Shown in pieces: positions 17,801 to 56,685 of a DNA stretch of 64,000 nucleotides. The translations under genes were made by a program, and so were the position numbers. Under the pieces are notes generated by a model. It was not told the DNA's origin and ran no database searches. It was given only the letters and a program-made list of their open reading frames with translations. Origin of the DNA: Macrostomum lignano (Eukaryota); contig NIVC01002061.1 in NCBI GenBank assembly GCA_002269645.1, positions 77,838 to 141,837 of the forward strand, written 5' to 3'. Numbering within the stretch: position 1 is the stretch's first letter; the number at the start of each line of letters is the position of its first letter.

Positions 17801-20800
17801 TCAATCCAGCAAAAAGCGCAGACTGTCGATTGCCTCCTTCCTGGAAACCAGTTCCCAGGTCGGAGGCAACTTTTTGATTCCTTTTCGATACTTAGCCTGC
17901 AGCTTGTCCTTAAATGTCCATGAGAACCAGTGCCAGAACTTTGCCGAATCGTTTCCTGCGTCGGGATCAATCTCCCACTCTGGAAAGTACTTTTTGTACT
18001 CTTTGTAAGGGTGATAGACTTCTTGTTTGCTGTCGGCACGACAGTTTGACGTCTGCTTACCCCTTCGCTTGCAAAAACCACATGAAAATCTGCCATCACT
18101 ACTAATTTCAAATTCACAATTATTGAATGCTAGCTGATCAATTCTAATATAATAAACACCATCCACTCCAGGTGGTCTGTGCTGAATGCAGCAATGCGGG
18201 CTGCCGTCTTTTTCGTGGTGATTTTCCTGAGACTTGCAGCACGGCTCGCTACAGAAAGGGCAGCGTTCTTTGCAGCCCCAAAGGCTCTGAAGCACATCGG
18301 AGTAGAGAGTGGAGTCTCCGTGCCATCTGACTGTTGACTCGTTCATACTAGCGAAGTGCTTTATTAGTGTGGATTTGAGGTCGCCCAGGCCGCCTAAAAG
18401 ATGTTTCAGCATGTCTTCCACTTTTACATTAGATTCGTAAGTGCAAACATGATATAAGTTTTTAGGAAGCACGGCGAGCTCTTTTTCGGCTTCTTTACAG
18501 AATTCATCGATCCAAACTTTCAGTGAGGTGCACCGAGTTGCCGCCACTCTTGCCGCTTCTTCAGTCACCGCAATTGTCGGCGCAATGAGCGATGACTCGA
18601 GATGGCCTGAAAATACACTGTTGCCATCCGATGTTCTCTGAAACAGCTGACGGTTAATGAACTGCGTCAGCCATTTCAGAGCAGTAGTATGGGAATCTCT
18701 CACGTATTCAAGGATCGATTCTGCGTCACGTCTCTGTGCCATGTCCGTTAGCATGCGAACAATGAGCTGGTACTTTGTCCTGCCGATCTCGTTCCGCATT
18801 ACTCCTCTCAATTTACCTGCCATTCTTTCCTGGAAAGCCTGTTTCATCACCGAGTACAGATGGTCACGAATAAAATCAGCCACCATCTTGGCTTCGGCCT
18901 GTCGGCGGACAATGTTTTCAAATAAGTTCAACATCTTTGTCTTCGTATCGGCCAGCTTTGTTTTGATGCTGTTGGCTTCGTAAAAATTCCGCGTAATCTG
19001 CTCAAATGTTGGGTATGCAGTGCGTAGGGCGAGGACCACTACCTTGATTTCGAATGCACGCGTTGTGCGGATATGATTGCTCGATAGTCTGAGAGAGGAG
19101 TTTACTGCATCACACACGTATTTTTGTATTCGATTAACGTGAACCTTAGAAACTCCTGTCAAGCCCCCCCTCATATCCTCGCAAAGACTTTGGACGGCCT
19201 TGAGAATGTCAGATACAAAGTCTACCACTAGCTTGCGTTCTTCTTTTTCTGGCTTACTGGAAACATAACTTTTTAATTGTTTGATTTTCAAACGTTCTGG
19301 TATGATGAGCTGAACAGTGTCTCCTTTAGGAAACAGTATTTCAGGTAAGCTATCACTTCGACCCGCTGATTGTCTCTTTAATGGCGTTTGCTCCAAAAAT
19401 ATGCCCACATATTTTTTTTCATTATAATAGATCTCTCGCAGTTGATCTACCACTTGACTTTCGATACTTCCGAAGTCGACTGTTCTCTCAGGTGGCAGCT
19501 GCTGCGCGAACTCCTGCCACAGAGCTTCGAATTCCTGCAGAATTTTTTCTGTTGAGCTGCTCTTTAGCGTGGGTGCAAGTTCGGTGGCCCGTCTTATGAT
19601 CTTAGACTCCCACTCCTCCGTCCGTGAACCTTGTTGAAGCTCAACTTTTTGCCCATCGCACAAGATTTGGAGTTTCTGCCGAAGTGACTGCTCAAGACTT
19701 TTGATGCAATCCCTTAAGGACACTAACTTTCGCTCCTTCCATTGTATTGTGTACTCACCGTACTGGTTTTCATAAAAAAATACGTTTAAGGACTTCAGAC
19801 CTTGCTGCTGCCAAGTTTCAAGCATAGCACGAAGCTCACTTATAGCCCTTTGCTGCACATCCGCGACAGCACTGACCGTTTCGCATTTCCTAACGGGAAT
19901 CGCTGCCGATTTATAAAGCCAGTCTTCGCTCAACTCTTCAATGTAATTTGTCACTTCGAGAAATTTGTTCTCCAGCATGTTGTAAGCCTTGAGTTCGACA
20001 CTGCTTTTAAAGCTGAACACAAAGTCCTCAGAAAGTATTGCCTTCCACAAATCATTTACTCGCTGAGAAAAGTCGCTGAATCCTAGATAGCTTTTCTGTT
20101 CTTTATCAAGAATATGCAAAAGGTGCTGCTTAATCTCCTGAACACCCATCGAGTAACCCGGATTCACTGGAGCCATGGGAGGGTCGCCTTGTAACAGATC
20201 TGACATAAAGAAAATATCCGTGTCTCTGTTGAACTGCAGAATGTCTCCGAAACGCTTCACGTCATGGAGACCTTCTCCTTCTGCAGCTTCCTTCGTCATG
20301 TGGTCGAGTTTCTGTTGTATCTTGAATGTCGCTTCCTGCATCATCTCTTTTGCTCCAGCCGCTGCTACATTCTGGTGTATGAAGATGCAGTGTCTGTGCA
20401 GATCTCGATCTTTGTTTGCCATCTTCATCCTGATGAAGGCGTGAATCGCGATCTGCAGAATCTCATTCATCTCCGCAGCGTTCTCTCCTTTGATGTTGAT
20501 GATGGTCACGTCGCCCAGTCCGATGACCAGTGTAGCCAGCTCGTTGTCATGATGATGCTTGTCCAGACCCAGCTCCGGAGCTCTCAGACCCTCGGTGTCG
20601 AGCACAGCGACATAGTCGAAAGGCATTCCCGACTCCACAGGAACTAGCTGCAGAAATGCGCCTCGAGTGCAGCGACCTGCGCTCACTGCGAACTTCAGTC
20701 CGAACATGGTGTTGAGCAGAGTGGACTTGCCTGAGCTCTGCAGACCGAGCACAGAGATCACGTAGATCTTCTTGTCACCGACCAGCTCCTGGCAGGTCTT

Positions 20801-23008
20801 GAGGATAGCAGAGATCCAGGCAGACGGGATGTTTCCAGCGTCGCCATCGAGAATCTCTAGAGGAACTCCGCACAGCAAGAGTTTGGCCATCACGCGTGGG
20901 ATCAGATTGATGTCAAGCGCTCGGAAAGTCTTTGTACTTTCTGAAGAGGCAGCTAAAATGGCCTCGTAGAATTGGCCCGCCTCTCTGAATATGTTTTCGA
21001 GGCCAATTGAAGCAAGCAGTATTTGATGGCCAAGTTCGGTGAGCTGATCATCAATTGCGGTCTGTGATGATTCATCCGCAATTTCTTTACGCTGCCGCAA
21101 TTCCTTCTGCATTTTTCTAAGCCTTGGCAAATGCTCTCTAGAAGAAGTGTCGAAGAAAGATCGAATGCACTGAAGCCAAAGCTTAACCAGAAGCTCATTG
21201 TCAGCAATCTTTGTCAGTGTGGTAAGAAACTCCTCCATAATGGGACTGAGTTGATTGCAGAGACCCATTTGCTGACGTCTGGCATTGAGACGCTGATGCT
21301 GAGCTTCCAACTTGTCTTCATCTGTTGCCTTAGAAGAGTTTTCTTTTTTGTAGTGGCGACTGTAGTCCATCCATTTTTCTTGCAAAGGAAGATGTTCTTT
21401 CCTTAAGTTCATCATTCCGCTCTTCGATACTTCCCCAAAGATGGAGCTGCAAAGCTGGCTTGCCTGAGAAACGAGAGAGCCGTCATCAAAGTCAACTTTG
21501 ATTTCTCCGATAGGTTTCTGCTCGGCGCCAACCTTTGCCAATGTCTCTGAAAGTCTTTGTTGAATTTCGCCAACTATTTCACGCTCTGGTTTTTTTTTCT
21601 TTGTGTCAACGCAGGAAAATGATTTAAGGGTACTCAACAACTCGCTGCTCAGCGGATTTGCGAGTGTCTGAGATCTGTAGAGAACCACTATCACTTCTAA
21701 TTCCTTCATTTTTGACATGCTTTGAAGCTGACTAAAGCACTCGGGCTGTGAAAGGGTGCTGACGTCCACAAAGACAACCACAACTTCGGAAGCTGAAGTT
21801 AAAACATGAGATTTATCTGCAAAATCCAGCAAGTCACCTCTGAGGTTTGTTGCCAAGAAGGCTCGAGTCAGTTTAATGTTTCTGGACGGCAGAAACACGG
21901 TGGCCTCAACGAGTCCGTTGCTGCAGACTCTGCGCGCGTGGCCGTTGGTGCAGTCTCTGTGGAAGAACGTCTCATGACTGCTGCCATTGAGTAGGGAGTT
22001 CAGCAACTTGGACTTCGACACAGGCAAATCTCCGATCCTCACAAATGATACCACCGGGAAATGATAGTCTGACATCAGGCTGGTCTCTATGTACTGGCCA
22101 TTTTCGTTTATGAACTGAACTACAATGTCTTTCAGGCTCCAGCTGCTCATGACCAGAGGCTTGTCAACAGTTGAATAGATGAATGGGAAAGCCAGCTTGC
22201 AAGCAAACAGAGCTTTGCAGAGCATTTGTTGCACCTCTTTGTCACAGCAGAGGTAGCTCGCAAGCAAAATATCTATCGGGTTCAGCTCATTCTCAGAGCT
22301 GCCTTCTTCATCGTCCTCGAGGTTTAAAAGTGACATTTCATCTGATGCCGTCGTCTCTGGAACCAAATTTCTTCCCTGTGCGTCGCAGCTGAGGAGTGCG
22401 CGGATGACTTGCCAGGCAACGGAGTTTTCCTTCAAATTTTTGCGCTCGTCCTGGCTTCTTTTGACGAAAAGAACGTCCTTGCGCGGGATTCTCTCTGGAT
22501 AATAAGACTCCAGCTCGAGACGTTCAACAGTTTCTTGAACTGATCCAAATTTTATTGGCTTTCTCGGTTCTGCAACTCCTGAGGTCGTTGGCTGTGGGTT
22601 GACAGTTGGTTCATCTGGCATCGAGCCTTGTCTTTTTGAATGTGTAGGAAATGGTGCTGGTGTTTCAAGTCTTGGCATTGGTCTTGGGGATAGCGATGGT
22701 TGAGTAGTCGACGATGGACCCGAGTCTTTCTGTACAATTTTATGCAGCTTATTAAAGAGGTCCGTCAAGGCTTGGTTGCTTTCTTCATCTCCCGCAAGCC
22801 TCCTCACCAGCGCATAGTCGATAGCTTCTAATGAGTCCAAGGTAGCAATATTTTTCTCTCTTAAGTACAGCTCTATAATGTTCAGAAACTCAGTGGATGC
22901 AAATTCGGGATGCTTTTCCGAAAGCATTTCCTTGGCGTTCAATGCAGCACTTGATAGACCGACTTCTTCTACATCTAAAATTGTCAAATGGAAATTTCTG
23001 ATTGGCAT
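17801..23008 (-). CDS. GVIN1-like: Very large inducible GTPase (VLIG/GVIN family), GVIN-A; main exon probably starts at the phase-1 acceptor 22974
   Basis: 1735-codon ORF with G1 GLQSSGKSTLLN, G2 RCT, G3 DTEG, HQNV, URGCP/GVIN-type FFHRDC...NGLVE region and C-terminal CPFCSEPC/HCCIQHRP. Two candidate acceptors: TTTTATACAG|c-ATG (23010) and TTGACAATTTTAG|AT (22975). Confidence 0.95.
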   Translation of the reverse strand: MPIRNFHLTILDVEEVGLSSAALNAKEMLSEKHPEFASTEFLNIIELYLREKNIATLDSLEAIDYALVRRLAGDEESNQALTDLFNKLHKIVQKDSGPSSTTQPSLSPRPMPRLETPAPFPTHSKRQGSMPDEPTVNPQPTTSGVAEPRKPIKFGSVQETVERLELESYYPERIPRKDVLFVKRSQDERKNLKENSVAWQVIRALLSCDAQGRNLVPETTASDEMSLLNLEDDEEGSSENELNPIDILLASYLCCDKEVQQMLCKALFACKLAFPFIYSTVDKPLVMSSWSLKDIVVQFINENGQYIETSLMSDYHFPVVSFVRIGDLPVSKSKLLNSLLNGSSHETFFHRDCTNGHARRVCSNGLVEATVFLPSRNIKLTRAFLATNLRGDLLDFADKSHVLTSASEVVVVFVDVSTLSQPECFSQLQSMSKMKELEVIVVLYRSQTLANPLSSELLSTLKSFSCVDTKKKKPEREIVGEIQQRLSETLAKVGAEQKPIGEIKVDFDDGSLVSQASQLCSSIFGEVSKSGMMNLRKEHLPLQEKWMDYSRHYKKENSSKATDEDKLEAQHQRLNARRQQMGLCNQLSPIMEEFLTTLTKIADNELLVKLWLQCIRSFFDTSSREHLPRLRKMQKELRQRKEIADESSQTAIDDQLTELGHQILLASIGLENIFREAGQFYEAILAASSESTKTFRALDINLIPRVMAKLLLCGVPLEILDGDAGNIPSAWISAILKTCQELVGDKKIYVISVLGLQSSGKSTLLNTMFGLKFAVSAGRCTRGAFLQLVPVESGMPFDYVAVLDTEGLRAPELGLDKHHHDNELATLVIGLGDVTIINIKGENAAEMNEILQIAIHAFIRMKMANKDRDLHRHCIFIHQNVAAAGAKEMMQEATFKIQQKLDHMTKEAAEGEGLHDVKRFGDILQFNRDTDIFFMSDLLQGDPPMAPVNPGYSMGVQEIKQHLLHILDKEQKSYLGFSDFSQRVNDLWKAILSEDFVFSFKSSVELKAYNMLENKFLEVTNYIEELSEDWLYKSAAIPVRKCETVSAVADVQQRAISELRAMLETWQQQGLKSLNVFFYENQYGEYTIQWKERKLVSLRDCIKSLEQSLRQKLQILCDGQKVELQQGSRTEEWESKIIRRATELAPTLKSSSTEKILQEFEALWQEFAQQLPPERTVDFGSIESQVVDQLREIYYNEKKYVGIFLEQTPLKRQSAGRSDSLPEILFPKGDTVQLIIPERLKIKQLKSYVSSKPEKEERKLVVDFVSDILKAVQSLCEDMRGGLTGVSKVHVNRIQKYVCDAVNSSLRLSSNHIRTTRAFEIKVVVLALRTAYPTFEQITRNFYEANSIKTKLADTKTKMLNLFENIVRRQAEAKMVADFIRDHLYSVMKQAFQERMAGKLRGVMRNEIGRTKYQLIVRMLTDMAQRRDAESILEYVRDSHTTALKWLTQFINRQLFQRTSDGNSVFSGHLESSLIAPTIAVTEEAARVAATRCTSLKVWIDEFCKEAEKELAVLPKNLYHVCTYESNVKVEDMLKHLLGGLGDLKSTLIKHFASMNESTVRWHGDSTLYSDVLQSLWGCKERCPFCSEPCCKSQENHHEKDGSPHCCIQHRPPGVDGVYYIRIDQLAFNNCEFEISSDGRFSCGFCKRRGKQTSNCRADSKQEVYHPYKEYKKYFPEWEIDPDAGNDSAKFWHWFSWTFKDKLQAKYRKGIKKLPPTWELVSRKEAIDSLRFLLD

Positions 23009-26808: not shown

Positions 26809-29800
26809 TTAAATAAGACCTTGAAGACTTTCAATGGCAGCACACTTTGAAACCAATCGCCATTCTGGCGGAATCCGATCCATCCTGATTCCTTTGGTTC
26901 GTTCCAGCTCCTCCTTGAAGCGCCACACGAACCATTTCCAAAACACTGCGTCCGAATTTCTCTCGTCTGGGGGGATATCCCAGTCTGGGAAGTACCTTCG
27001 GTAAGCAGAATAGCGGTGTTGGTAGTTTGGATCGAAATTGCGCTGGACGCAGTTCTCCGATGGCTTAGTGCTATATTGGCACGCTGAGCAGGAAAACGTG
27101 ATTCTTCGAGGTCCAGTGTCAAGATGCAGCCAGGATCCGCAAGTTTGAGCCATAAACTCCCTTGTTGCCACCCAGTGCCAGCCGGAGACTCCCTGTGGTC
27201 TGTGCTGCACGCAGTGATGCGGACTGCCATCAATGTCAAAATGGTGCAACAAAGACTTGCAGCACGGCTCTCTGCAGAATGGGCATTGCTCCTTGCAGCC
27301 CCAAATTTTGCTGAGCACAGATGAGCACAAATCTGTTTCACCGCAAACAACTTCTTTAACATTCCGGACATTTGAATAGTGTTGCATCAGACGACTTTTC
27401 AGATTGCTTATTTCAGAGACTACAGTGCGAACAACTTCCTCCAAATTTGCTGATTTATAACTTTTCAGCTGAACCAGATCATTTGAACCAAACTGAATGT
27501 CAGCTGGCATGAGGGAAGGAAGCTTTTCAATCCACTCTTGAAAACTTTTCGATTGAGCTGCAGAATCTTGTATCGATCTTTTTGCACTTTCCAGCTGCGG
27601 GTCAATCAGTGACTTAACTATTGTTATAAGTTCAATGCCAGCCTGGCTACTGTGCCCTAGAAATGTAGCATTAATGTACTGATCAAGCCAGTAGAAAGCA
27701 CTTTCATATGGTACAGCGATGTATTTAGCCAGTGAGTCGAAGTCCTCTCTATCTGCCATGTCTTTCAGCATGCACACAATCAGATGGTATTTTGTCCTCC
27801 CCAAATCATTCAAGATCCTGCTTCGTAGGTCAGCTCCGACTTTCCAATCAGTCAACCGAATCACCAAAGCGCGCAGATGGCCCATGAAATACTCAGCCAC
27901 GATTTCACTGTCGCATTTTCCTTGGACTGTGCTCTCAAACAGTCTCCACATTCGTTCTTTTGAGTCTGCGAGTTTTGCTTTCTGACCGCTTTTATCAACA
28001 AACCTTCTGTCCATTGCGACAAGGTGTGGAAAGGCGAATCTGAATGCAATGACTGTCAGTCTTATTTCCAACTCGTTAGTGAGTCCAATCCACTGCTCTC
28101 TAAACTTCTCTGACGCTAGTTTTTGCAAACCAACACGAATCATTTGATGAATTGTTGGGATGTCTGAGCCCTTCTTTGCAAGTTCAACAACTGCTTTAAC
28201 TAGTTCTTTGCTTTCGGTCAGTACTGTGACAGACCTGTTCTTTTTTGCATCTGCTGCGTTTGATAACGGTTTAGTTCCGCATTTCGAGTCGCCTTCTATC
28301 GATGCGTAAAGGGTAGATCGATTTGGCACAAGACTATGTTCCACTACATTTTCGATTGACTCATCAGGTTTCAATGAAATTGGGGATTCCCGAAGAACAT
28401 CGTCGAGGGTGCGACCCTCGCTTGAGTAAAATTGCTTTAGGTGGTCTACTATCATTTTTTCTATCACAAGTCGTTTATTTTTTGGCTGAGATGCAAACTG
28501 ACTTTCTAATTGCTTCCAAAGTTTGTCAAACTCTTCGCGAATTTGTTTAGCTGAAACGTTCTTTTGTCTTTTAGTCAATTCATTCCCTCTTGCCACCACC
28601 ATCTGTTCCCATTTCTGCTGCTGAAAACCCTGCTCTAACTCCTCTCTCTGCTCGCTGCACATCGCTTCCATTTTTCTGTGTGTCTCAAGTTCAAGGTTGC
28701 GAAAGCTGTGTTTGAGATTCTCCAACGTTTTTTCTTGGAAATGCAGCACGTACTCTCGGTATGGGCTTTCGTTGAAAAACCTTTTTAAAATGTCCGACGT
28801 GTCCTTAAATTCTTTCATGAGAAATTCTGTCAGATTCGCTTTGGATCTTGCTAAAGTCTCAGCAATCAACTCGCATGTTGAACACACTCGAATGGCATTG
28901 GCTACGGTACTCTGCAGCCATTCCTCTAAGCGGTCTTCAACATCGCCCATTGTTTTTAGGAGTCTTTTTTCAAGTCTGATATATGCTTTCCGCTCAATGC
29001 TATTCCTAAAACTGAACACAAAGTCCTCAGACAGTATTGCCTTCCACAAATCATTTACTCGATGAGAAAAGTCGCTGAATCCCAGATAGCTCTTCTGTTC
29101 TCGATCAAAAATGTGCAAAAGGTGCTGCTTAACCTCCTGAACACCCATCGAGTAGCCTGGATTCACTGGAGCCATGGGAGGGTCGCCCTTTAACAGATCT
29201 GATATGAAGAAAATATCCGTGTCTCTGTTGAACTGCAGAATGTCTCCGAAACGCTTCACGTCATTGAGACCTTCTCCCAATGCAGTTTCTTTCGTCATGT
29301 CGTCAAGGGTTTGATGCATTTTGAATGTCGCTTCCTGCATCATCTCTTTTGCTCCAGCCGCTGCTACATTTTGATGAGCAAAAATGCAACGCCGTTTTAT
29401 GTTAATCATTCTGTTTGCCATCTTCATCCTGATGAAAGCGTGAATCGCAATCTGTAGGATATCCTTCATCTCTGCAGCGTTCTCTCCTTTGATGTTGATG
29501 ATGGTCACGTCTCCAAGTCCGATGACCAGTGTAGCCAGCTCGTTGTCATGGTGATGCTTGTCTAGACCCAGCTCGGGAGCTCTAAGACCCTCGGTGTCGA
29601 GCACAGCGACATAGTCGAACGGCATTCCCGACTCCACCGGAACCAGCTGCAGAAATGCGCCTCGAGTGCAGCGACCCGCACTCACTGCGAACTTCAGTCC
29701 GAACATGGTGTTGAGCAGAGTGGACTTGCCTGAGCTCTGCAGACCGAGCACGGAGATCACGTAGATCTTCTTGTCACCGACCAGCTCATGGCAGCTCTTG

Positions 29801-32312
29801 AGGATGGCAGAGATCCAGGCAGACGGGATGTTTCCAGCGTCGCCATCGAGAATCTCTAGAGGAACTCCTAGCATCAGAAGATTTGCAAAGCACTTTGGTA
29901 AGTTGTTTACTAAAGGCCTTTTATCGGTTAAAATGTCGATTTCGGCTTCTTGAAGGGCTTCAAAAAGTTGACCCTCTTCTCTAAAAAGATGTTCCAGTCC
30001 TACGGAGCAGCTCCGCAGTTTTTTTTCGAGCTTTTTTAGCTGCTGTTCAGTTCTTAGTCTCTCTTGCATTTGCTTTGTTCCCAGTTTGTCTACCAGCTCT
30101 CTTTTGCGTTCTAACAAAGCCGGGAAGGTTTTCCTTGACTTCTCATCAAGCTTCAGCTTTATGCATTGTACATACAGCTTTGCTAGTAAGAAATTGTCGT
30201 TGCAATCACTGGCTGCGTTCAATACTTTTGCAAACGTTAGGGCAAGTGTCTTTGATGCCTTCAGTATTTCGATTTGCTTATTTCGAATGCCAGCTCTTCT
30301 TAACGAGCTGACCTCAATTTCTTCAGGAGATTTAATATTGTACTCCTTTCTCAGTAGTTGACTGTATTCTAGCCACAGAGCCGTCAGGGGCAAGCATTCT
30401 TGTGCCAAGTTCGTCTGGTCTCCCGCGTCAATTTTAATCAGCAGTGCGACGGCACTTTTCATAGTTCCACCTGGGAAACTATCGAAATCGGACTGCTGGA
30501 GTTGCTGCGCGAACGGAATTTCTCTATTTAAATTTTCATTAACCAGCTTTTGAGCGAGCTCGCGACTTAGGTCACTGAGAAGCTCCCGTTCCGCTTTTGG
30601 TCTCCTTCCACTAAAAGCTGTTACTGTTGGCAACGATGCAACAATTTCTTTTTCCTCTTCGGTGTATTCTTGAGACTTGCTTTTAGTAGATCTGACCATT
30701 TCTTTGAACACAACGAGAATGATTTCAGCTTTTTCTCTCAGATTCCGAAGACTTTGCAAGCACTCTTGCCCTCTAAGTATTTCCAACTCGACAAAAACTA
30801 CAATGACATGGGAGACTTCGGCCAATAGGCGAGCTTGCTCATCGAACTCTAAAACGTTTCCTCGAAGATTTGCTGTCAAGAATGGCCGGGCCATGCCGGC
30901 CGAAGTGCTTGTCTTCGACGGCAGAAACACTGTGGCCTCAACCAGACCGTTGCTGCAAAGCCTTCGAGTTTGTCCGCCGAAGCAGTCTCTGTGAAAGAAT
31001 GTCTCATGACTGCTGCCATTGATAAGAGAGTTCAGCAGCTTGGACTTGGACACAGGCAGCTCTCCGATCCTCACAAAGGACACCACTGGAAGCGGGTAAT
31101 CTGAAACTAGACTGGTCTCGACGTACTGACCGTTCGGATCTCGAAATTGGAGAATGATGTCTCTCAGGCTCCAGTTGCTCATCACTAATGAGTCCTTCTC
31201 ATCTCGGTAGATAAGTGGAAAAGCCAACTTGCAGGCAAACAGAGTCTTGCACAGGATTTGCTGCACCTCCTGGTCGCAGCAGAGGTAGCAGCAGAGAAGA
31301 GCATCGATTGGGTTGACTCCTTCCTCCGAATTATCCTCTTCTTCCTCTTGCAAACTAATTTTTGATTGCAAAAGGATGCTGGAATCCGGCCTAACAGCTC
31401 GTCCGTCATAATTAAAAAGCTGTCTTAGTAGATACCAGGACGTTTGAGTTGGCTCCAGGCTCTCTGGTGCCTCAATGTTAGATGCTACGACTTTAATTAT
31501 TTGCGTGAAAGGTATGGACATTGGAAACCAGTCACTCATTCCTATTTTAGTCACCATTTCTCTCAAACCAGAGTTTTCCGTGTAAGTTTCTTGAGTCTGC
31601 CTATCTTTTTGTGCTTCAATTTCGTGCGAGTCAACTTCAAGAGATTTCTTATGAGTTGTCTCGACATCTTCAGCCTCACTTTCCGATTCGGACCTCTCAG
31701 AGCGCTGCGCTTCGTCATCATTGCCTGGCTCAGTAGCTGGAGAGTCAGTAGCCGTGTTGGAGTGTCCAGCTTGGTTTTCTTGGCTGTCGAGTTCATCGCA
31801 CTGCATGGCAGCTCCCTTTTCGTCATCAGTCTCTTGATCCGAACAGTTGTTAGGAACTCTCACACAGGCTTCGGGTTGAATCTGGATGTCTCCTGACTGT
31901 AGAGTCAACAGGTACTCCAAGAGAGCATTAATATCCACTGAGCAGCATTTTCCGGGTTCCTGGTTATGCATCTTCTTTCCTGGCAAATTTCCTTCTATAT
32001 CTTTTCTGGTGCTTTCCTTTTTTGTCTGATATTTCTGAACTTTCGCTATAGCATCTCTGTTTTCAACAAAAAGAGATTTTATTTCATCCAGTTGTCTTAA
32101 AACACGGTCTGCCATTTCTTTGTCCTCTTGGCTGTCTTGTTGCTGAGCGAGACTCTCGTGGTCGTTTTTAAAGGTCAGATGAAAAACGCTGGGTACGGTT
32201 TTCACGGACATGCAGTACTTTTGAAGTTTGTTTTTCCACTTTTCTGCGTCTGCCTCAACCAGAAACTGACGAAGAGCGACTTCAATGGCCCTGTTCATTG
32301 ATGGCGGCTCAT
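26809..32312 (-). CDS. GVIN1-like: Very large inducible GTPase GVIN-B, main coding exon
   Basis: Uninterrupted ORF with the same G1/G2/G3 motifs, FFHRDC...NGLVE and C-terminal CPFCREPC; polypyrimidine acceptor TTTTTCATTCCAG|AT at 32313-32314 (phase 1). In-exon ATG at 32298 is an alternative start. Confidence 0.95.
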
Positions 32313-32781
32313 CTGGAATGAAAAATGGCAAAGCCAGTGGGCCAGCTGCTAGTTGCTACTAATATCAGATTAACAATTGGTCAGTTCACGTGCCTATATT
32401 TTCCATAAAAACCTGGTGCAAAAGGTATTGAACATTGATTTTGATTTCTACGACAAAAGGCGGTGCTAAAATTGTTTTAGCAATTTCAGCGCCAATTACA
32501 CAATTTTATACATCAGAGGGCTATGCGCTGGAAACAGAATCTTTCAATTATCCCATCTTCTGATCAAATGAATTGATGAAATTAATTCGAAACTTTGAAG
32601 CTTCCAAACTGGTACAACTGCGCTTGTGCCAGTGTGTGCCTGTCAAACTGCGCGTGTCCATGTGTAAAAATTAAAATTTGCGCTTGTGGATGTGTCTTTC
32701 TGTGTCTATTTCCAGGAAATATGTCTATATTTTTATAGAGAAGTCTTTACTATTGCTTTCGACCTTAAGTCTACATCTAAC

Positions 32782-34764: not shown

Positions 34765-35054
34765 CGAATGTTTGCAAAATAGTTCCAGGGATTGGAATTC
34801 AGCGGGTTCAAAGTCCGCGGGTATCCACAGCTTGAGTTCATATGAAAGGCATTAAATTTGTAAAACAAATCCTAGCCGTCTGTAAATTTTCACCTCATAA
34901 AATAGATTACTGCAAAACCGAAAATTCACGAATTGTATCCACATTTCGCAGCAAGTGGGTAGGAGAAAGAGAGAATTATTTTTACGTGTAATCTTAGGTA
35001 ATGACAGTGTAATACGTTGCAACTTTGTGAGTTAGTTATTGTCCCTTTTCAAAC

Positions 35055-43668: not shown

Positions 43669-43939
43669 TGTTGGAAATGACAAGCTAAGGCGAGCAATTG
43701 CTATGAGACGAGAATACGATAGCTCTGAGCCAATGCTCCGTGCGAAACTATTTATTATCAACGATAAAGCACGAACCCGCGACAACCCCCCAACCCAGGA
43801 CTAAAACTCACCGCACTGCACATTAGAGCACGATGACAATAATAACTTGATACGTACACTCAGACTGAACAAAAGTACAAGCACCAGTGAAATAAGCAAT
43901 CAAATAATAAACAGTGCGAAGCCCCGCCCAAGCCTAACA
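43669..43939 (-). repeat. 3' LTR
   Basis: TGTTGGAAATG...CCTAACA; preceded on the minus strand by purine-rich GTGGGGAGCAG (PPT candidate, 43940-43950). Confidence 0.97.
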
Positions 43940-44008
43940 CTGCTCCCCACAAAAAGCAGACAAAATTCAAAGACAGTCACTTGAAATCCCCACAGTCAAT
44001 TTCACTCA

Positions 44009-45480
44009 TCAGTCCTTGTAGCAAACAGGCTGCCGAGGGCGAAACTCGTACGGCTCCCGGTGGCAAATGTTTCCGGGCTCCTGGCGCTCCAGGTCGAGCC
44101 GCGGGTCGTCTTCCATGGCAACCACCGGGTCAGTCAGCGCACCATCGGGTTCAGGTGTCTCAAGCCGCTTAGGAGAGTCCGGCCGGCCGGTCCACTGATT
44201 TGAGAGCGCCAGCCGCAGGCCACCGCCAGGCTGATTGGCCGGAGTGACAAGCGCCGTGTTCAGGCCGTGCTGCACCACGAACTTGGCTGGCACCGGAGGA
44301 GTTCCAGGTCGCATCCTCAGCCAGATTGGATCGCCAGCTTGCTCCGTCATTGTCAGCGGGTGTCGAAGCCGACGGCCCCACATGAGGATGTCTGGAGAGG
44401 CTGCGCGATTGCCGCTTGGCCGGCTGGTCCTTATCGTCAGCAACAGCTTTTGCAGAAAATGGTCGAACGGCACCACCTTAGTCCACGCTCTGAGACCATC
44501 CTTAATGATTCGCACCAGTCTCTCAGCTTGACCATTCGAGGCGGGATGATACGGCGGGGTGTGCAGTTCACGACAACCAATGCTGCGCAGCCACTGCGAG
44601 ACCTTCTCCGACTTAAACTCCGGCGCATTGTCCGACACCAGCGTCTGAGGCACTCCATTCCTCGCAAAAACCGCTCTTAGAACACGCAGTACACTTTCTG
44701 CAGATCGATCAGGCACCTGAATCGCCTCAGGCCACCCTGAATAGGAGTCGGACAACAGCAGGAGCAGCCCAGCACCAGAGATCTCACAGTGGTCCATGTG
44801 AACTCGCGCCCATGGCTCACTCTCGGCTGGCCAGATGTCGATTTTCCGCTGAAGCACCGGTCGAGTTTCTGAGCACTGCCGACAGCGCTCTACAAAAGTC
44901 CGCACCTCGCGATCCAGGCCAGGCCACCAGAATTCCTTGGAGATGTGCGCCTTGGTGTTGTCAGCACTCGGGTGTACTTCGTCATGGGCCGCCTCCAGGA
45001 TGCGCCTGCGGAGAATGGGTGGCGGCACAATTCTGGTTCCATGGATCACCAGGCCATCTTCGACTGACAGAGCCTCACGACACGCCTTGTACGGTCTCTC
45101 CACCTGCGACACCTGGCCCCACCTGCCGGTTCTGATTCTCTGCCGGAGCCGTGTCAACAGCGAACACCTCCGAGTTCCTTCACGTAACTCTTGCAAGGTC
45201 ACCAGAGCCCCTTCAGTGACGACCTCAGACTCCAGCTGGTGAATTAAATCATTCTGTGCATCTTGCTCGGCAAAGCTCAAGCGTGACAAAGCATCAGCAT
45301 CCGTCATCAGCCTCCCAGGCACGTACTCGACCACGTAATCGAAAGCCGACAGTCTCAAAGCCCAGCGCATTAGTCTTGCTGACACCGTTTTGGGGAGGTT
45401 TTTGCTCGGATTGAAAATATACTTTAGCGGCTCATGGTCGGTCTGGAGAGTAAACCTCTTGCCTAGCAGCATCTTGCAGA
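44009..45480 (-). pseudogene. Gypsy RNase H C-terminal remnant plus integrase (out of frame with RT)
   Basis: LLGKRFTLQTDHEPL...RLMRWALRL (RNase H tail); HHCC zinc finger (H..VH...WWPGL...C..C); DDE core VHMDH / VSDNAPEF / QAERLV. Confidence 0.92.
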
Positions 45481-47589: not shown

Positions 47590-47596
47590 GCATGCA

Positions 47597-47614
47597 ATCC
47601 TGCTTGCGACGCCA
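47597..47614 (-). promoter_or_regulatory. Primer binding site, probably tRNA-Ser
   Basis: TGGCGTCGCAAGCAGGAT 3 nt after the 5' LTR; complement ATCCTGCTTGCGACGCCA has T-stem CCTGC, 7-nt acceptor strand, G discriminator and CCA. tRNA identity is inference. Confidence 0.75.
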
Positions 47615-47617
47615 AAA

Positions 47618-47888
47618 TGTTGGAAATGACAAGCTAAGGCGAGCAATTGCTATGAGACGAGAATACGATAGCTCTGAGCCAATGCTCCGTGCGAAACTAT
47701 TTATTATTAACGATAAAGCACGAACCCGCGACAACCCCCCAACCCAGGACTAAAACTCACCGCACTGCACATCAGAGCACGATGACAATAATAACTTGAT
47801 ACGTACACTCAGACTGAACAAAAGTACAAGCACCAGTGAAATAAGCAATCAAATAATAAACAGTGCGAAGCCCCGCCCAAGCCTAACA
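47618..47888 (-). repeat. 5' LTR
   Basis: 271 bp, differs from the 3' LTR at two C/T sites (TATCAAC/TATTAAC, CATTAG/CATCAG). Confidence 0.97.
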
Positions 47889-50285: not shown

Positions 50286-51110
50286 ATGCAAGCGCAAAGC
50301 TTGCAGTCCAAGGCGCAGATTCGAGAGCTACTGCGCCAGTTCGCCCCGGATCTAGACTCGTCTGAGTGGGCAGGTACTCTCTTTGGGCATCTAAAAAGGC
50401 ATAAGATCAATGAGCTGTCACTGCTGTCTCCCGAGTCCGACTACAGCACTCTCGAAGAGAATGCAGAGACAGAGGAAGAAGCCAGAGCGTTAATTGCTTT
50501 TCTAGAAGCCATGCGTACCAGTGCTGGGGAACGGCAAGCGGGCGCCAGCCAGGTAGATTCTGCAATTCCAAGCGGAAAAACTCCTTCAGCGCCACCGGTG
50601 CAAACAGATTTTATTCACTGGAATCCCCAAGCAAACCAGCCATACTGGCCCACCGGTATGCACGGCTATCACCCAAATATGCCGATGGGCCCGCCGTTTC
50701 ACCAGCCATTTCCAATGGACTGGCAACGTTTCAACTTTCCAGCTCAACAGCCAGCACCTGCAGGAAAAAATGAGGGCGAATCAACTGGACAGCAGGTCCC
50801 TGTGGGTCAGCAGTTCTACCACCTAGGCCACCTAGGGACTATGCGACAGCATGGCCAACCAACTGGACAGCAGGTTCCTGTGGGTCAGCAGTTCTACCAC
50901 CAAGGCCAGCTAGGGACTATGCGACAGCATGGCCAACCAACTGGACCGCAGGTTCCTGCTGTTCCACTTTCTTCCACAATGCCGCTACCATTTTCTGGAC
51001 ATCCAGACAATCATCACTACATGCATCCACAGTTGAACTACTTTGGCCAGCAGCCTTACTTGGAATCGCAGTTCCACGGTCAAATGAATCATCAAATGCA
51101 GCAGAGTCAA

Positions 51111-51145
<35 letters not shown>

Positions 51146-54100
51146 ACAAATATTCGTCAAAAGCAATGAACAACGTCATAAGGCAGAAGTTTTTGAAGAT
51201 AGCTCAGAAACCTGCATCCCTGACAGCGATCCGAAGCTTTCTGAGCAGTCCGTAGCTCTCAAGAAGCCTGGTTATCAGACAGGACACGTTCCTGCAGGCT
51301 TAGAATATTCAAGTAAGCAAGTGGCACCACTAGAAACGCCCTCTCAGTCGGACCAATTTCAACAGTATCAAGAACAGACGGCAAAATTTGCGACTGAATC
51401 GTCAAAAGGCAGTCTATACCCGCAAATTAATCCAGAAAGAACTGACGAAAGGGAGGTCACCAGTGCTGGGGAAGATCGTCAAGAAGAAGTATTCGATGAT
51501 AGTCAGCCGCAAAGTAATGAGGCAGTGTCAAAGCCAGAAAAGCCAAAGAAAACTAAATTTCCCCTGTTTAAACGATTTTCGAAGAAATCGAAAAAAGAAG
51601 AGGCAACAGATGAGCAAGGCACAGAACAGCAAGAAGCTGTCAGTAAATCTTGTACTGGTAATCAACTGGACGAAATGACTAGGTCTGGCCGTCGATCCTT
51701 AGTTGAAAGCGGCAGTCTGCCCACTGAAAAATCAAAGAACGAAAGAGGCTCGACAATAGAGAGGAATGGTCAAGCTCAATCCCGTCGAAGTCAAGTAAAA
51801 ACACACCAGAGAAACCTGGTTTCCGAGCTGTACTTGACTGAGTATTTCCCAGAGAAAATTCGTCTGTGCCAATTAGCCAAAATTGTCGATATAAAACCAA
51901 TGGACCAACCGGTTGAAGTAAAGAAACAACGGAGCATCTTCAAAAGCCTTCTACGAGCCTCTATTCGAGCAAAAAAGAAGAAAGGGGACAATGCGCTTGC
52001 ATGGAGCTTGCTAAGAGGACTGATGAGCTATGATGGGACAGTCAGAGACCTGGTCCCGAAAACTAATTCACCGAATAAGCCGTCCGCCAGCAGAATGCTG
52101 CTGGAAGAAGATGATGATGCTGATTTGGATGACGCCTTGAATCCAATAGATATTCTCATAACATGTTACCAGTGCTGTGATAAAGAGGTGCAACAGGTTC
52201 TGTGTAAAATTTTGTTTGCCTGCAAACTGGCATTTCCATTCATTTTTTACAATGGAAAATCGCTGACAATGAGCCACTGGAGCTTAAGAGACATTGTTGT
52301 GGAGTTTCGCGACCAAAACGACACTTACGTATCCACAAGTCTCATATCTGATCAAAAGTTTAAAGTCGTTTCCTTTGTTAGAATCGGAGAGCTGCCCGAG
52401 TCAAAATCTCGCCTGCTCAACTCTCTCCTGAACGGAAATGACCATGCAACATTTTTTCACAGGGACTGCACCGGTGGGCATAGTCGCAGAGTTTTAAGCA
52501 ACGGGCTTGTCGAAGCAACAGTCTTTCTGCCCGTTTCCAGCCGCAAGTCATTTGAAGCACCGTTTCTAGCGGCAAACTTGCGGGGCGACTTGCTTCAGTT
52601 TAGCCAACAAGCGGGGATCTTGAGTGAAATTTCACAAATAGTGGTTGTGTTTATCGATGCGCAGAGCTTTGTTAATCCTGAGTGCTTTACGCTGCTACAA
52701 AAACTCGAAACAAGACTTACGCTTCTCCTTGTCTTGTACAAGACAGAAGCAACCACAATTTCGAAGGCTGAGTTTCGCACCGAGCACGAAGCTTTTCTGC
52801 AGCGCAACGGTAGTGTTTTTGCGTTTAGAAAAAAGGGCAGGAAGAGTGAAAGAGAGGTGTGCTCAGAAATAGAACTCATTCTGAACGCCCAAATTTGCAA
52901 ATGCGAGGGTTTTCAGATGGAAAAACTCGAAATTCGGCGCGCAAACTTGGATGAGAGCGAAAAAGTATCGCAAACAAAGCGTTTGTCTCTGGAAATAATG
53001 AAATATTTTGTCTCTGAGAAATCAGCTCAATTTAAACAGAAGCATCTGCCATTGCAAACCTTATGGCTGGAGGTCAGCAAGCTCTACAAGGTGGAGAACG
53101 CTGCAAAAACAGCTCAAACAGATCAACTGATTAGCCAAAAAATGAGAATGGAAAAGAGAAGTGCACAGCTTAGGATTTGTGAAAGACTGAGCGAGTTCAT
53201 CATCGTTTTTGTGAAATCCTTGTTAAATTTAATAAAAAGCGAAGATGCTGAACTCGCAGTAAAACTTCTGCTGCAATGGATGAAACTAACGTTCGACAAT
53301 AAGTCAAGGAAACTATTGCCTCAGCTGCAGAAGAAATGCAACGAGCTTCGGGATCATACGCAAAATAGACGAAAGCTGGATTCTGATCCTATAGTCACAT
53401 TAGCCTCTGTACAGAAAATTACACTAGATGCTTCAGTCGGACTCGAAAATGTGTTTCGAGAAGTTGGCCAAATTTTTGAAGCCTCTAGTGGAAATCCAAA
53501 CCGTGTTCCTCGAAGTCTCCTAAATTTTGTACAGCCGCTACCGAAATTGTTTGCTCAGTTGCTTCTTTGGGGAGTCCCCTTGGAGTTTTTGGATGGCGAC
53601 GCTGGAAACATCCCGTCTGCCTGGATCTCTGCTATCCTCAAGAGCTGCCAGGAGCTGGTCGGTGACAAGAAGATCTACGTGATCTCCGTGCTCGGTCTGC
53701 AGAGCTCAGGCAAGTCCACTCTGCTCAACACCATGTTCGGACTGAAGTTCGCAGTGAGCGCAGGTCGCTGCACTCGAGGCGCATTTCTGCAGCTGGTTCC
53801 GGTGGAGTCGGGAATGCCGTTCGACTATGTCGCTGTGCTCGACACCGAGGGTCTGAGAGCTCCGGAGCTGGGTCTGGACAAGCATCACCATGACAACGAG
53901 CTGGCTACACTGGTCATCGGACTGGGCGACGTAACAATAATTAACATCAAGGGCGAAAACTCAGCCGAGATGAAGGATATCCTACAGATCGCGATTCACG
54001 CCTTTATCAGAATGAAGATGGCTAACAGGATGAGGATTTGCACAGGCACTGCATCTTCATCCACCAAAATGTTCCTGCAGTTGGAGCTAAAGAGCTGATG

Positions 54101-56685
54101 CAGGAGGCAGCATTCAAAATGCAGCAGACACTGGACACTATCACGAAAGAGGCAGCTGAGGGAGAAGGTTTGCGTGGTGTCTGCGGCTTCACTGACATTA
54201 TTTCATTTGAAAAAGAGTCCGACATTTTTTACATGTCAGACCTTTGGCAGGGCGACCCTCCGATGGCTCCAGTGAACCCTGGATACGCACAGAAGGTGTC
54301 GGCTATCAAAGACTATTTGCTACATCTTCTTGAAGGGGAAAGAAAGCACTTTCTCAGCTTTCCCGAATTCTCCTGCCGTCTCGCCGATCTTTGGAAAGCA
54401 ATCCTATCTGAGGATTTCGTCTTCAGTTTCAAGAACACCATACAGCTAAAGCCTACAGCCAAATGGAAGCAGAGTTTTTCGAGGCAAAAAATCTCATGGA
54501 ACAAGCTGCAGAAGAATGGCTTAACAGGGAGGCGTCAATTCAGATAAAAAAGTGCCGTGATGTTACCGAGCTTTGCAAAGTTCGGGAGCAAAATTTGAGT
54601 GAACTTCAAGGCCTCGTCAGTAAACACCTGGAAAGTAGCCGAAGCCGACTTGAGAAGTTTTTCGAGGAGGGCCAATACAGCGAGTATGCAATTGAGTGGA
54701 AGGAACGAAAAATTATTGCTTTGCAAAACTTCTCCAAGGATCTGCAACAAGAAATGAAGAAAAAGCTTTTCATCATGACGGAGCGCCACAAAGCTGACAC
54801 CGAAAGGGAGCGGAAAAATGCAGAGATGGAGCGTCGGATCCTCGCAAAAGCAAAAAATCTAGCAAAGCAGTTTCGAGGTCAAAACTTGGATGTGCAGTTT
54901 TTGAAACGAGGGTTTGAAAGGGAATGGCAAATGTTCATGGATGACCTGCCTGTTGAGTCAACCGACGAGACACAGCGTATCGAAACGCAAATTGTTTTAT
55001 GTCTGGAGGAACTTTATGAAACCAACATTAAGATGTTGCGCTATTATCTTGAAAAAAAACCAATAAATTCTGGTGAAGATAGACTTGCTGTTTTGACGGA
55101 GTTTTTAAATGAAGAAGAGAATTCTTTTCAGTTGATTCAGGTCCAACCTTCAAGTGTTCAACGTTTCACTCAAGGAGTTAAAAATTTGTTATCTGGAGCT
55201 GAAAATCGTTTGGATGAAGCAGATGAAGCTACAAAACAGGAAGTTCAAAAGTCCTGCAACAATATTTTGACATCAATCGCTCCAATTATAGATGATATGA
55301 AGAAACAGACCACAGGGTTTCAGAGACAGTTCGTTGTAGCGATTCAGAAAGCCATTCGGCTAGGAGTCGAGGAGCAAGTAAATGGAAAACTAGACAAGCG
55401 CGGCATTAGCTCAACACCAGCCCTTGAAATCAAACTTGTGACTCACGCACTGAGATTCACTTATCCAATTTTCATCGAAATGGATGAAAAATTTCACGAG
55501 GGGCAAAGTCTCAAAGCCAAATTGGCGCTGTCAAAAGATCAGATGTGGAACTTGTTTCAAAACATTGTTCAGCAGCACAACCATTCTAAAATTTCAGCAG
55601 ACTTTTGCCGAGATCATCTGGCCGTCGTTATCAAAGATGCTGTCAAAGCGCGAATGGAGAGAATCCTAAAAAGGCAAATAATTACCAATATCGGCACAAC
55701 AAAATACCAATTAATCGTCACGGTGCTCACTGACAAGGCTCGGAATGATGATTTCGATTCTATTATTCAGTACAGTCAGAATCCACACTCGTCAGCTCTT
55801 AAATGGGTAACGGATTTCGCAGAAAAGAGGCTATTTCACAAGAAGCGAACAGACAAAGATTCATTATTCTGTCATCTTATTCTATCCGAACTGGTGGATC
55901 CAATCTTAGAATCAATTAAAACTGCCGCAGAACTTTCAGCCAGCAGTTCAAAGAATCTTTCATCGTGGATCGATGGATTTTGCAAGGCCGCAGGAAATGA
56001 GCTTGCAGTTCTGCCTCGAAACCTGCAAAACATGTTGCAGTTCAAATCGGCCACCACTGGCGATATGAAAAGTTATTTGCTTGACGGTTTATTTAAGCTG
56101 AGATCGGATCTGCATTCCCACTACAATGCTGTCACTGAGAATTCTGTAGAGTGGCATGGAGAGAAAACTCTCTATGCAGACGTGATTCAGACTCTGTGGG
56201 GCTGCAAAGAGCAGTGCCCCTTCTGTAGAGAGCCGTGTCAGAAAGCTGACCCGAATCACTGCGAAACCGATGGAAGCCCTCATTGCTGCATTCAGCATCG
56301 ACCTAAGGCTGTTTGTGGGACGTATAAAATCAGTAACGATGAATTAAGCTTTAAAACATGTGAAAATTCTGTTAAAGGTGAATCTAAATTCACTTGTAAT
56401 GTGTGCAAACGAGAAGGGAAGACATCTGAATCATGTTCTTCCGACACAAGTCGCGCCGCACGTCGAGAAGTTCGGCATCCGTACAAGGAATACAAGAAGC
56501 AATTTCCAGATTGGGAGATCGTACCGGACGCAGCCAATGACTCGGCAAAATTCTGGATGTGGTTCTGCTGGACATATCAGCGGCAGCTACAGGAGAAGTG
56601 GCAGAAAGGACTCGGCCAGATCCCGCCCGCTTGGCAGGACGTCTCAAAGGAAGACGCCATCAACAGTCTTCGAGGTCTTCTGTAA
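50286..56685 (+). CDS. GVIN1-like: Very large inducible GTPase GVIN-C (2133 aa if two 1-bp deletions at about 54027 and 54450 are corrected)
   Basis: Three overlapping ORFs join into one VLIG: Q/P-rich N-terminus, FFHRDC...NGLVE, G1 GLQSSGKS, DTEG, then ANxDEDLHRHCIFIHQNV and LKAYSQMEAEF after adding one base each; C-terminal CPFCREPC. Acceptor CCATTTCAG| 9 nt before ATG. Confidence 0.88.
50782..50960 (+). repeat. In-frame 78-bp (26-aa) tandem repeat, about 2.3 copies
   Basis: CAACTGGAC starts at 50782, 50860, 50938; encodes TGQQVPVGQQFYH(L/Q)G(H/Q)LGTMRQHGQP; a (CAG)n poly-Q run follows at about 51113-51142. Confidence 0.93.

What the first reader, a model, noticed from the sequence alone, without database searches (positions are those of the whole stretch)
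53592..53932. Sharp 341-bp GC-rich conversion cassette homogenising GTPase motifs G1-G3 in all three paralogues
By eye, C 53592-53932 differs from A (20508-20848) at about 6 sites and from B (29507-29847) at about 9, nearly all synonymous, while the proteins are only distantly similar elsewhere. C equals the consensus at every variable site and switches abruptly to AT-rich synonymous codons on both sides (GTC CCC TTG GAG TTT TTG | ... | GTA ACA ATA ATT). This indicates recent gene conversion, including between inverted genes more than 20 kb apart, keeping the catalytic/dimer interface identical while specificity regions diverge.
Basis: partly seen in the sequence, partly recalled or inferred. 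Interest (0 to 1): 0.75.

Follow-up and report, generated by a model that had tools for sequence, protein, structure and literature searches.

The report
Gene-conversion tract in flatworm immune GTPases
Three very diverged giant immune-type GTPase (VLIG/GVIN-like) genes of the flatworm Macrostomum lignano share a 341-bp stretch that is 97-98% identical, which is best explained by one paralogue copying from another (gene conversion), a process already documented in other immune GTPase families.

Summary
C 53592-53932 (+) matches the reverse complement of A 20508-20848 with 6 differences and of B 29507-29847 with 9. C has no private difference. Flanking DNA is about 50% identical and the proteins are 44-51% identical.

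Where the amino acid is the same, the codon is also the same in 93-95% of tract codons. That figure is 51% in the next 100 codons and 34-45% elsewhere. Tract dS is 0.06-0.17. It is saturated in the adjacent 33 codons, where the protein is just as conserved. A silent-site permutation test places the significant fragment exactly on the tract (p<=1e-4).

The window is from Macrostomum lignano. Four more copies on two other contigs carry the tract at 95-98.5% identity, two of them in 600-bp orphan gene fragments. A distant paralogue shares only a run of 21 identical codons around the P-loop.

Shared variants are reticulate, and the tract is the GC3 peak of each gene. No RNA family or RNA structure signal was found.

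Best explanation: repeated non-allelic gene conversion, with the 341-bp event into C the most recent.

Corrections to the finding: A and B share a longer block of 866 bp, and C carries two frameshifts. This is a new member of a known kind; MxA/MxB and IFIT1/IFIT1B are the precedents.

The parts
53592..53932 (+). Conversion tract in gene C (341 bp). It encodes DGDAGN...GLGDV, which includes G1 GLQSSGKST, the switch I Thr (RCTRG) and G3 DTEG. It has no private variant among the 7 high-identity copies.
20508..20848 (-). The same tract in gene A, with 6 differences from C (5 synonymous).
29507..29847 (-). The same tract in gene B, with 9 differences from C (8 synonymous).
20010..20875 (-). Longer block of gene A shared with B (about 90-100% identity in 30-bp windows). 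It is interrupted by a diverged patch at about 20370-20429. This reflects older or separate A-B exchange.
29009..29874 (-). The B counterpart of the 866-bp A-B block (ungapped offset 8999).
53688..53758 (+). 71-bp core around the P-loop with no variable site in any of the nine copies examined. It includes the 21-codon run (53697-53759) shared with the distant paralogue E.
17801..23008 (-). Gene A main exon (1735-aa ORF; BOX15_Mlig019641g2). It carries the URGCP and URGCP_GTPase domains. Annotated upstream LIM exons lie at 24771-24920 and 25103-25282.
26809..32331 (-). Gene B (1840-aa ORF; BOX15_Mlig019641g1), a VLIG-type GTPase.
50286..56685 (+). Gene C, a VLIG-type GTPase read in three frames (3, 2, 1) because of 1-bp deletions near 54033 and 54447. 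It is either a young pseudogene or carries assembly indels.

Best explanation
The tract is the footprint of repeated non-allelic (interlocus) gene conversion among VLIG/GVIN-type GTPase paralogues of Macrostomum lignano.

Shown: anciently diverged genes (synonymous sites saturated, proteins 44-51% identical) carry a segment whose synonymous sites are nearly identical. The segment has different lengths in different pairs: 341 bp into C, about 395 bp common to A, B, D and F, 866 bp for A-B, and about 63-85 bp in the distant paralogue E. Variants inside it are shared in incompatible combinations. It occurs on at least three contigs and in both orientations.

Inferred: each event was a repair of a DNA break that used a paralogue as template, copying a few hundred bp without crossover. 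The 341-bp event in C is the youngest, because C sits at the hub of the star with 0 private changes. Its donor was an unsampled consensus-like copy. The G1-G3 core is where events pile up because strong protein constraint keeps enough nucleotide identity there to start heteroduplex formation. Conversions that reach into the diverged flanks are either aborted or selected against. The raised GC3 of the tract, and the excess of GC-to-AT changes among minority alleles, fit GC-biased repair acting on a frequently converted segment. After each event the protein stays under purifying selection (tract dN 0.004-0.02).
For: Tract versus flank: dS is 0.060 (A-C), 0.100 (B-C) and 0.169 (A-B) in the tract. 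In the adjacent 33 codons dS is not computable (saturated), although dN there is only 0.013-0.052.
Same-codon fraction: 0.93-0.95 in the tract against 0.51 and 0.34-0.45 outside, with Fisher p about 1e-12. The ceiling from codon bias alone is 0.52.
Permutation test on silent sites: p<=1e-4, with endpoints on the tract.
Mosaic structure: A, B, D, D2, F and F2 agree with each other and against C at all 17 flanking sites just outside the tract. The A-B block is 866 bp. E shares 21 identical codons in a row (P about 2.5e-8).
Reticulation: 26 of 78 informative site pairs fail the four-gamete test. The shared variants 53651, 53855, 53916 and 53924 are transversions.
Fragment F is B-like on its left flank and A/D-like on its right flank.
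C is the hub of the star: A-B = 15 = 6+9, and the probability that C has 0 of the 15 differences is 0.002.
GC3 is 0.68-0.73 in the tract against 0.46-0.51 outside, and the tract is the GC3 maximum in A, B, C and D. Minority alleles run 23 S>W against 6 W>S.
There is no Rfam match, and RNA folding is no better than shuffled sequence (z +1.9 and +1.1).
An independent assembly supplies a protein model containing the F copy (P0089).
Precedents: localised conversion of the GTPase/P-loop region between MxA and MxB (PMC4687636) and of the 5' two-thirds of IFIT1/IFIT1B (PMC4887208).
Against: No sequence from another Macrostomum species could be obtained. The classic test, paralogues within a species being closer than orthologues between species, was therefore not done.
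No sampled copy is identical to C, so the donor is not identified.
A tract that equals the consensus at every site is also what short-read polishing with cross-mapped reads would produce. The '0 private changes' of C may therefore be partly technical.
The A-D and D-D2 tract divergences are no lower than their flanks. There is thus no sign of conversion since those duplications in those pairs.
The 71-bp core that is invariant in all nine copies could reflect a nucleotide-level constraint in addition to conversion.
Confidence: 0.85

Rival explanations
1. Conversion is real but is actively favoured by selection. Under this reading, homogenising the G1-G3 nucleotide-binding/dimerisation surface keeps paralogues able to co-assemble or be co-regulated, or spreads escape variants, while the other domains diversify.
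For: The tract covers the P-loop, switch I and switch II. In dynamin-superfamily GTPases these form the G-G dimer interface (established knowledge for GBP, atlastin and Sey1). dN in the tract is very low (0.004-0.02). The same idea has been proposed for Mx (PMC4687636).
Against: Nothing here separates 'favoured' from 'tolerated'. The adjacent 33 codons are equally conserved in protein without being homogenised in C. C may be a pseudogene, and F is a fragment, yet both carry the tract. The intact paralogue E is not homogenised apart from about 63-85 bp.
Confidence: 0.2
2. There is no conversion. Instead the tract is held identical by purifying selection on the nucleotide sequence itself, for example a structured RNA, a shared small-RNA target, or extreme codon optimisation.
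For: A 71-bp core (53688-53758) is invariant in all nine copies, including the distant E. GC3 is also raised in the E tract (0.64 against 0.54).
Against: There is no Rfam hit, and folding energy is worse than shuffled sequence on both strands. Codon bias explains at most a 0.52 same-codon fraction against 0.95 observed. E is intact but only 78% identical over the tract. Block lengths differ between pairs, and variants are shared reticulately. The edges in C fall inside protein-conserved sequence.
Confidence: 0.05
3. The tract is an assembly or polishing artefact, produced by collapse or by cross-contamination of paralogues during consensus calling.
For: C equals the consensus at every variable site. 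C also has two 1-bp indels close by, which may be assembly errors. The assembly is long-read based with many near-duplicate loci.
Against: Polishing cannot turn sequence that is about 50% identical into sequence that is 98% identical over 341 bp with codon-exact edges. A, B, D, D2 and F keep their own private variants. The tract recurs on three contigs. It also appears in a protein model from a different assembly (P0089). All copies stay in frame and their changes are mostly synonymous.
Confidence: 0.04
4. The shared segment was inserted into each gene as a mobile or captured cassette, by a transposon-borne gene fragment or by template-switch filler DNA, rather than exchanged by homologous conversion.
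For: Isolated 600-bp copies (F, F2) exist outside any full-length gene, and dispersed repeats abut their left ends.
Against: The tract replaces homologous codons exactly, with no length change and no target duplications or terminal repeats. The downstream flank of F is collinear with the B-A intergenic region of the window (69-74% identity). F is therefore best read as a deletion remnant of a B-like gene upstream of D.
Confidence: 0.02

Closest known systems
[quoted passage not shown] 2015, PMC4687636
   Same: The paralogues are immune-type large GTPases. Conversion is restricted to the part of the GTPase domain that includes the P-loop (G1), while other regions diverge. The same open question applies: hotspot, tolerated conversion or favoured conversion.
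   Different: The GTPase family differs (VLIG/URGCP rather than Mx), and the host is an invertebrate flatworm. More than two partners take part, at least 7 copies on 3 contigs and in both orientations. The flanks are far more diverged, with saturated dS. The evidence here comes from within one genome only, without cross-species phylogenies.
IFIT1/IFIT1B partial gene conversion in mammals, Daugherty et al. 2016, PMC4887208
   Same: The signature is the same: about 97-98% identity in one part of the gene against about 62% in the rest. It also holds at synonymous sites and has a recurrent breakpoint.
   Different: In IFIT about two-thirds of the gene (around 950 bp) is homogenised between two tandem genes. 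Here the segment is a short internal one (341-866 bp) shared among many copies.
VLIG/GVIN1/URGCP family of very large inducible GTPases
   Same: A, B and C match the Pfam URGCP and URGCP_GTPase domains far above threshold. The best non-flatworm relatives are named interferon-induced very large GTPase 1. Each coding region is essentially one very large exon.
   Different: No paper was found that describes conversion in this family. Flatworms have no known interferon system (my own knowledge), so inducibility and immune role are assumed, not shown.

Membership tests
VLIG / GVIN / URGCP large GTPases (genes A, B, C) | URGCP_GTPase (PF25683) and URGCP (PF25496) domains above the Pfam gathering score | tested here: met
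   PF25683 scores 376.6, 364.9 and 299.6 bits against a cut-off of 55. PF25496 scores 165-186 bits against a cut-off of 27.
VLIG / GVIN / URGCP large GTPases (genes A, B, C) | Canonical G motifs: P-loop GxxxxGKS/T, switch I Thr, DxxG | tested here: met
   GLQSSGKST, RCTRG and DTEG lie in the tract. They align to the corresponding motifs of the Sey1p and GBP1/2 G domains.
VLIG / GVIN / URGCP large GTPases (genes A, B, C) | Induction by infection or interferon-like signals, and an antimicrobial function | not testable with these tools
   No expression or functional data were available.
Interlocus gene conversion tract | A discrete segment of near-identity between paralogues, bounded by diverged homologous sequence, with no length change | tested here: met
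Interlocus gene conversion tract | Synonymous divergence in the segment far below that of the flanks, controlling for protein conservation | tested here: met
   dS is 0.06-0.17 in the tract and saturated outside. The adjacent 33 codons have equal dN but saturated dS.
Interlocus gene conversion tract | Significant fragment in a GENECONV-type permutation test on silent sites | tested here: met
   using my own implementation of Sawyer's maximal-fragment test with 10,000 permutations: A-C and B-C p<=1e-4, A-B p=3e-4.
Interlocus gene conversion tract | Incongruent relationships in the tract versus the flanks, with reticulate variants | tested here: met
   In the flanks A groups with D and D2 (dS about 0.2) while B, C and E are saturated. 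In the tract all seven copies form a star around C, and 26 of 78 site pairs are incompatible.
Interlocus gene conversion tract | Concerted evolution: paralogues within a species are more alike than orthologues between species | not testable with these tools
   No other Macrostomum sequence was retrievable.
Interlocus gene conversion tract | Read-level confirmation that each copy is assembled correctly | not testable with these tools
   No reads were available. The only indirect support is a protein model from another assembly (P0089).
GC-biased gene conversion footprint | Local GC3 peak on the converted segment | tested here: met
   GC3 is 0.68-0.73 in the tract against 0.46-0.51 outside. The tract is the GC3 maximum in A, B, C and D.
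GC-biased gene conversion footprint | Fixation bias towards G/C beyond what mutation bias gives | tested here: inconclusive
   minority alleles run 23 S>W against 6 W>S. This shows the tract lies above its mutational GC equilibrium, but the same pattern would follow from selection on codons. Polymorphism data are needed.
Structured or catalogued RNA element inside the tract | An Rfam match, or folding energy better than shuffled sequence | tested here: not met
   0 Rfam matches at E<=1, and z-scores of +1.9 and +1.1.

The most novel reading that the evidence does not exclude
The homogenised core may be more than a passive conversion footprint. The 71-bp P-loop segment is invariant in all nine copies, including a 42%-identical paralogue on another contig. 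Orphan 600-bp fragments (F, F2) consist of essentially only the convertible region, stay in an open 282-codon frame, and are retained upstream of gene D in two loci. Together these could mean a maintained donor cassette or conversion-initiation site, or a shared nucleic-acid target (for example for small RNAs) that co-regulates the whole VLIG family.
Probability: 0.08. Interest if true: 0.65.

Novelty: new member of a known kind. Interest (0 to 1): 0.4.

Why it matters
The tract is a clean, quantifiable example of short-tract conversion between paralogues that are otherwise saturated at silent sites. It occurs in a family (VLIG/GVIN) and a phylum (Platyhelminthes) for which my three full-text searches found no paper describing conversion.

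Practically, phylogenies or orthology calls for Macrostomum VLIG genes that include the G1-G3 region will be misleading. Short-read mapping and polishing across this segment are also unreliable.

Biologically, it extends to an invertebrate the pattern seen in Mx and IFIT genes. In that pattern the enzymatic core of immune paralogues is homogenised while the other domains diverge. The system also gives tract endpoints defined to within about 3 bp, which is useful for estimating conversion tract length and GC bias in a flatworm.

Tried and rejected
- Protein database search with the 113-aa tract alone: it returned only proteins under 200 aa, all at most 75% identical and none from Macrostomum, so it was useless for finding paralogues. 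The full-length query and the domain alignment found only M. lignano copies plus distant animals.
- No other Macrostomum species could be found. The one Logan contig (L003, 33% protein identity, organism unknown) has no tract match.
- An exact 32-mer scan of metagenome contigs gave 0 hits.
- Look-ups of the two C reading frames as annotated proteins found nothing on record. There is therefore no independent copy of C.
- RNA-element explanation: rejected.
- Antisense ORF overlapping the tract in A (20264-20647, +): there is no counterpart of at least 100 aa at the B or C tract. I read it as a by-product of GC-rich codons.
- Codon-bias explanation: rejected quantitatively.
- I first read fragment F as proof that a dead sequence is kept fresh by conversion. 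I downgraded this. F-B identity (92%) is close to what the A/D duplication age alone predicts, and F lies in an open frame. F remains suggestive through its chimeric flanks and only 5 differences from C, but it is not decisive.
- Literature: no paper was found on conversion in VLIG/GVIN genes or on this locus.

Full report
WHAT IS THERE

The window holds three large genes of the VLIG/GVIN/URGCP GTPase family.
- A: 17801-23008 (-), an intact 1735-aa ORF.
- B: 26809-32331 (-), an intact 1840-aa ORF.
- C: 50286-56685 (+).

All three match the Pfam URGCP and URGCP_GTPase domains far above threshold. C is read in three successive frames because of two 1-bp deletions relative to A and B, near 54033 and 54447. 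Each piece stays open in the homologous frame. C is therefore either a very young pseudogene or carries assembly indels.

A database search identifies the source as Macrostomum lignano, assembly GCA_002269645.1, contig NIVC01002061.1. A is BOX15_Mlig019641g2 and B is Mlig019641g1. The proteins are 44% (A-B), 40-68% (A-C) and 28-61% (B-C) identical.

THE OBSERVATION

C 53592-53932 aligns without gaps to the reverse complement of A 20508-20848 and of B 29507-29847.
- There are 6 A-C differences (5 synonymous) and 9 B-C differences (8 synonymous).
- The repeat finder picked up the same pairs independently as inverted repeats 23.6 and 32.7 kb apart.
- In 100-bp windows identity is 0.97-0.99 inside the tract and 0.4-0.6 over most of the genes.
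- Immediately outside the tract, C differs from A and B at 8 of 21 positions on the left and 9 of 31 on the right. Almost all are third codon positions, while the protein continues unchanged (GVPLE.. on the left, VTIINIKGEN on the right).

IS IT MORE THAN PROTEIN CONSTRAINT OR CODON BIAS?

- Same-codon fraction among codons with the same amino acid is 104/109 (A-C) and 101/109 (B-C) in the tract. In the next 100 codons it is 36/71 and 34/67, and over the rest of the genes 0.34-0.45. Fisher p is 1.5e-12 and 3.5e-10.
- Drawing codons independently from the tract's own codon usage predicts at most 0.52.
- Nei-Gojobori dS in the tract is 0.060 (A-C), 0.100 (B-C) and 0.169 (A-B). In the adjacent 33 codons dN is as low (0.013-0.052), but dS for A-C and B-C is too saturated to compute.
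- A Sawyer-type maximal-fragment test used only codon columns where A, B, C and E have the same amino acid. It gives p<=1e-4 for A-C and B-C, with fragment ends exactly on the tract. For A-B it gives p=3e-4 for a longer fragment.

MORE COPIES AND A MOSAIC

Two other contigs carry related loci.
- L001 and L005 each hold a close paralogue of A (D and D2, 85-88% protein identity). Their tracts are 96.8% and 95.3% identical to C.
- About 5.5 kb upstream of each lies an isolated 600-bp VLIG fragment (F and F2), whose tract is 98.5% identical to C.
- A distant paralogue, E (42% protein identity; L002, with a near-copy E2 in L006), is only 78% identical over the tract. It nevertheless shares a run of 21 identical codons at 53697-53759 (P about 2.5e-8 given the background).
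- No variable site occurs between 53688 and 53758 in any of the nine copies.

The blocks have different lengths in different pairs.
- A, B, D, D2, F and F2 agree with each other and against C at all 17 variable sites in 53567-53591 and 53933-53963. Their common block is therefore about 395 bp.
- A and B are about 90-100% identical over 866 bp (A 20010-20875), apart from a patch of about 60 bp where B differs.

Inside the tract the seven high-identity copies form a star with C at the hub. Differences from C are A 6, B 9, D 11, D2 16 and F 5, and A-B = 15 = 6+9. Of 78 informative site pairs, 26 fail the four-gamete test. Four of the five shared variants that cause this are transversions, which are unlikely to recur.

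F is B-like on its left flank and A/D-like on its right flank. Its downstream flank is collinear with the B-A intergenic region of the window at only 69-74% identity. F is therefore best read as a deletion remnant of a B-like gene that once stood upstream of D.

A UniProt protein model from a different M. lignano assembly (P0089) contains the F copy joined to a LIM exon. This gives some independent support that these copies are real.

COMPOSITION

GC3 is 0.68-0.73 in the tract and 0.46-0.51 in the rest of each gene. In A, B, C and D the tract is the GC3 maximum. Minority alleles within the tract run 23 GC>AT against 6 AT>GC. The segment therefore sits above its mutational GC equilibrium. This fits GC-biased conversion but does not prove it.

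ALTERNATIVES TESTED

- There is no Rfam family at E<=1 in 53000-54600. Both strands of the tract fold worse than shuffled sequence (z +1.9 and +1.1).
- The antisense ORF over the tract in A has no counterpart in B or C.
- Polishing artefacts cannot create 341 bp of identity from flanks that are about 50% identical, and the copies keep private variants. Polishing could, however, contribute to C being exactly the consensus.

MECHANISM (INFERENCE)

The best explanation is repeated repair-templated copying between non-allelic VLIG genes, in several events.
1. An older A-B exchange of about 0.9 kb. dS in its right part is about 0.3-0.5.
2. Homogenisation of the 395-bp core at about the time of the duplication that produced D and F. 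Tract dS is about 0.14-0.17, against about 0.14-0.23 for the flanking regions of A versus D/D2.
3. A micro-tract in E.
4. A most recent 341±3-bp event into C. C has no private change (P=0.002 under equal rates). Its donor is not among the sampled copies.

The tract encodes the P-loop, the switch I Thr and DTEG. This is shown by alignment to the Sey1p and GBP G domains. Strong protein constraint there probably preserves the homology needed to start conversion. Whether homogenisation is merely tolerated or is favoured was not tested.

COMPARISON WITH KNOWN CASES

The closest precedent is the localised, recurrent conversion of the BSE-GTPase/P-loop region between MxA and MxB (PMC4687636). A second is the partial conversion of IFIT1/IFIT1B, which shows the same pattern of about 97% against about 62% identity (PMC4887208). 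No paper describing conversion in VLIG/GVIN genes or in Macrostomum was found.

VERDICT

It is a clear new example of a known process rather than a new kind of system.

Noticed in passing
window ~54033 and ~54447: Gene C has two 1-bp deletions relative to A and B, shifting the frame from 3 to 2 to 1. All three pieces remain open in the homologous frame (1270, 169 and 740 aa). C is either a very young pseudogene or has long-read assembly indels. Neither deletion lies in a long homopolymer.
   Followed up: partly
L001 6499-7104 (open frame 6343-7188); L005 9052-9702 (open frame 8896-9741): These are orphan 600-bp VLIG fragments (F, F2) that contain little more than the convertible G1-G3 region. 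They sit in a conserved 282-codon open frame about 0.6 kb upstream of the LIM exon of gene D. The left flank is B-like and the right flank A/D-like. A UniProt model from another assembly (P0089) splices the fragment to the LIM exon.
   Followed up: partly
window 53688-53758: This 71-bp stretch around the P-loop has no variable site in any of the nine copies. That includes paralogue E, which is otherwise 42% identical in protein.
   Followed up: partly
window 29369-29428 (B), equivalent to A 20370-20429: Inside the 866-bp A-B block there is a patch of about 60 bp where B differs from A, D and F. At the protein level B resembles C and E there (ANRM...). This points to a further small exchange or a retained ancestral patch.
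   Followed up: no
window 43669-47888: A Gypsy-type LTR retrotransposon lies on the minus strand between B and C. Its 271-bp LTRs are 99% identical, and it has open protease-RT and RNaseH-integrase frames (44009-45532, 45463-47646). It is likely a recent insertion.
   Followed up: partly
window 24771-24920 and 25103-25282 (-): The annotated gene A has two small upstream exons encoding a LIM zinc-finger domain, fused N-terminally to the VLIG body (P0079). This is an unusual domain combination for this family.
   Followed up: no
window 5530-5976 and 40530-40901: Two G-rich minisatellites have related 14-15-bp units (GAGTGATGCTGAGGG). They cause the strong local GC-skew peaks.
   Followed up: no
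window 50286-52140, with a tandem repeat at 50775-50958: C has an N-terminal extension of about 475 aa ahead of its first similarity to A (about 375 aa more than A ahead of the URGCP domain). The first 618 aa of C have no Pfam match. The extension contains a 78-bp repeat present in 2.4 copies.
   Followed up: no
window 59959-60504 (-): An ORF with a HIT/DcpS_C domain (Pfam E=2.9e-21), apparently an unrelated neighbouring gene.
   Followed up: no
window 33001-36000: GC skew swings sharply over three consecutive 1-kb windows (-0.31, +0.32, -0.23). The cause was not examined.
   Followed up: no
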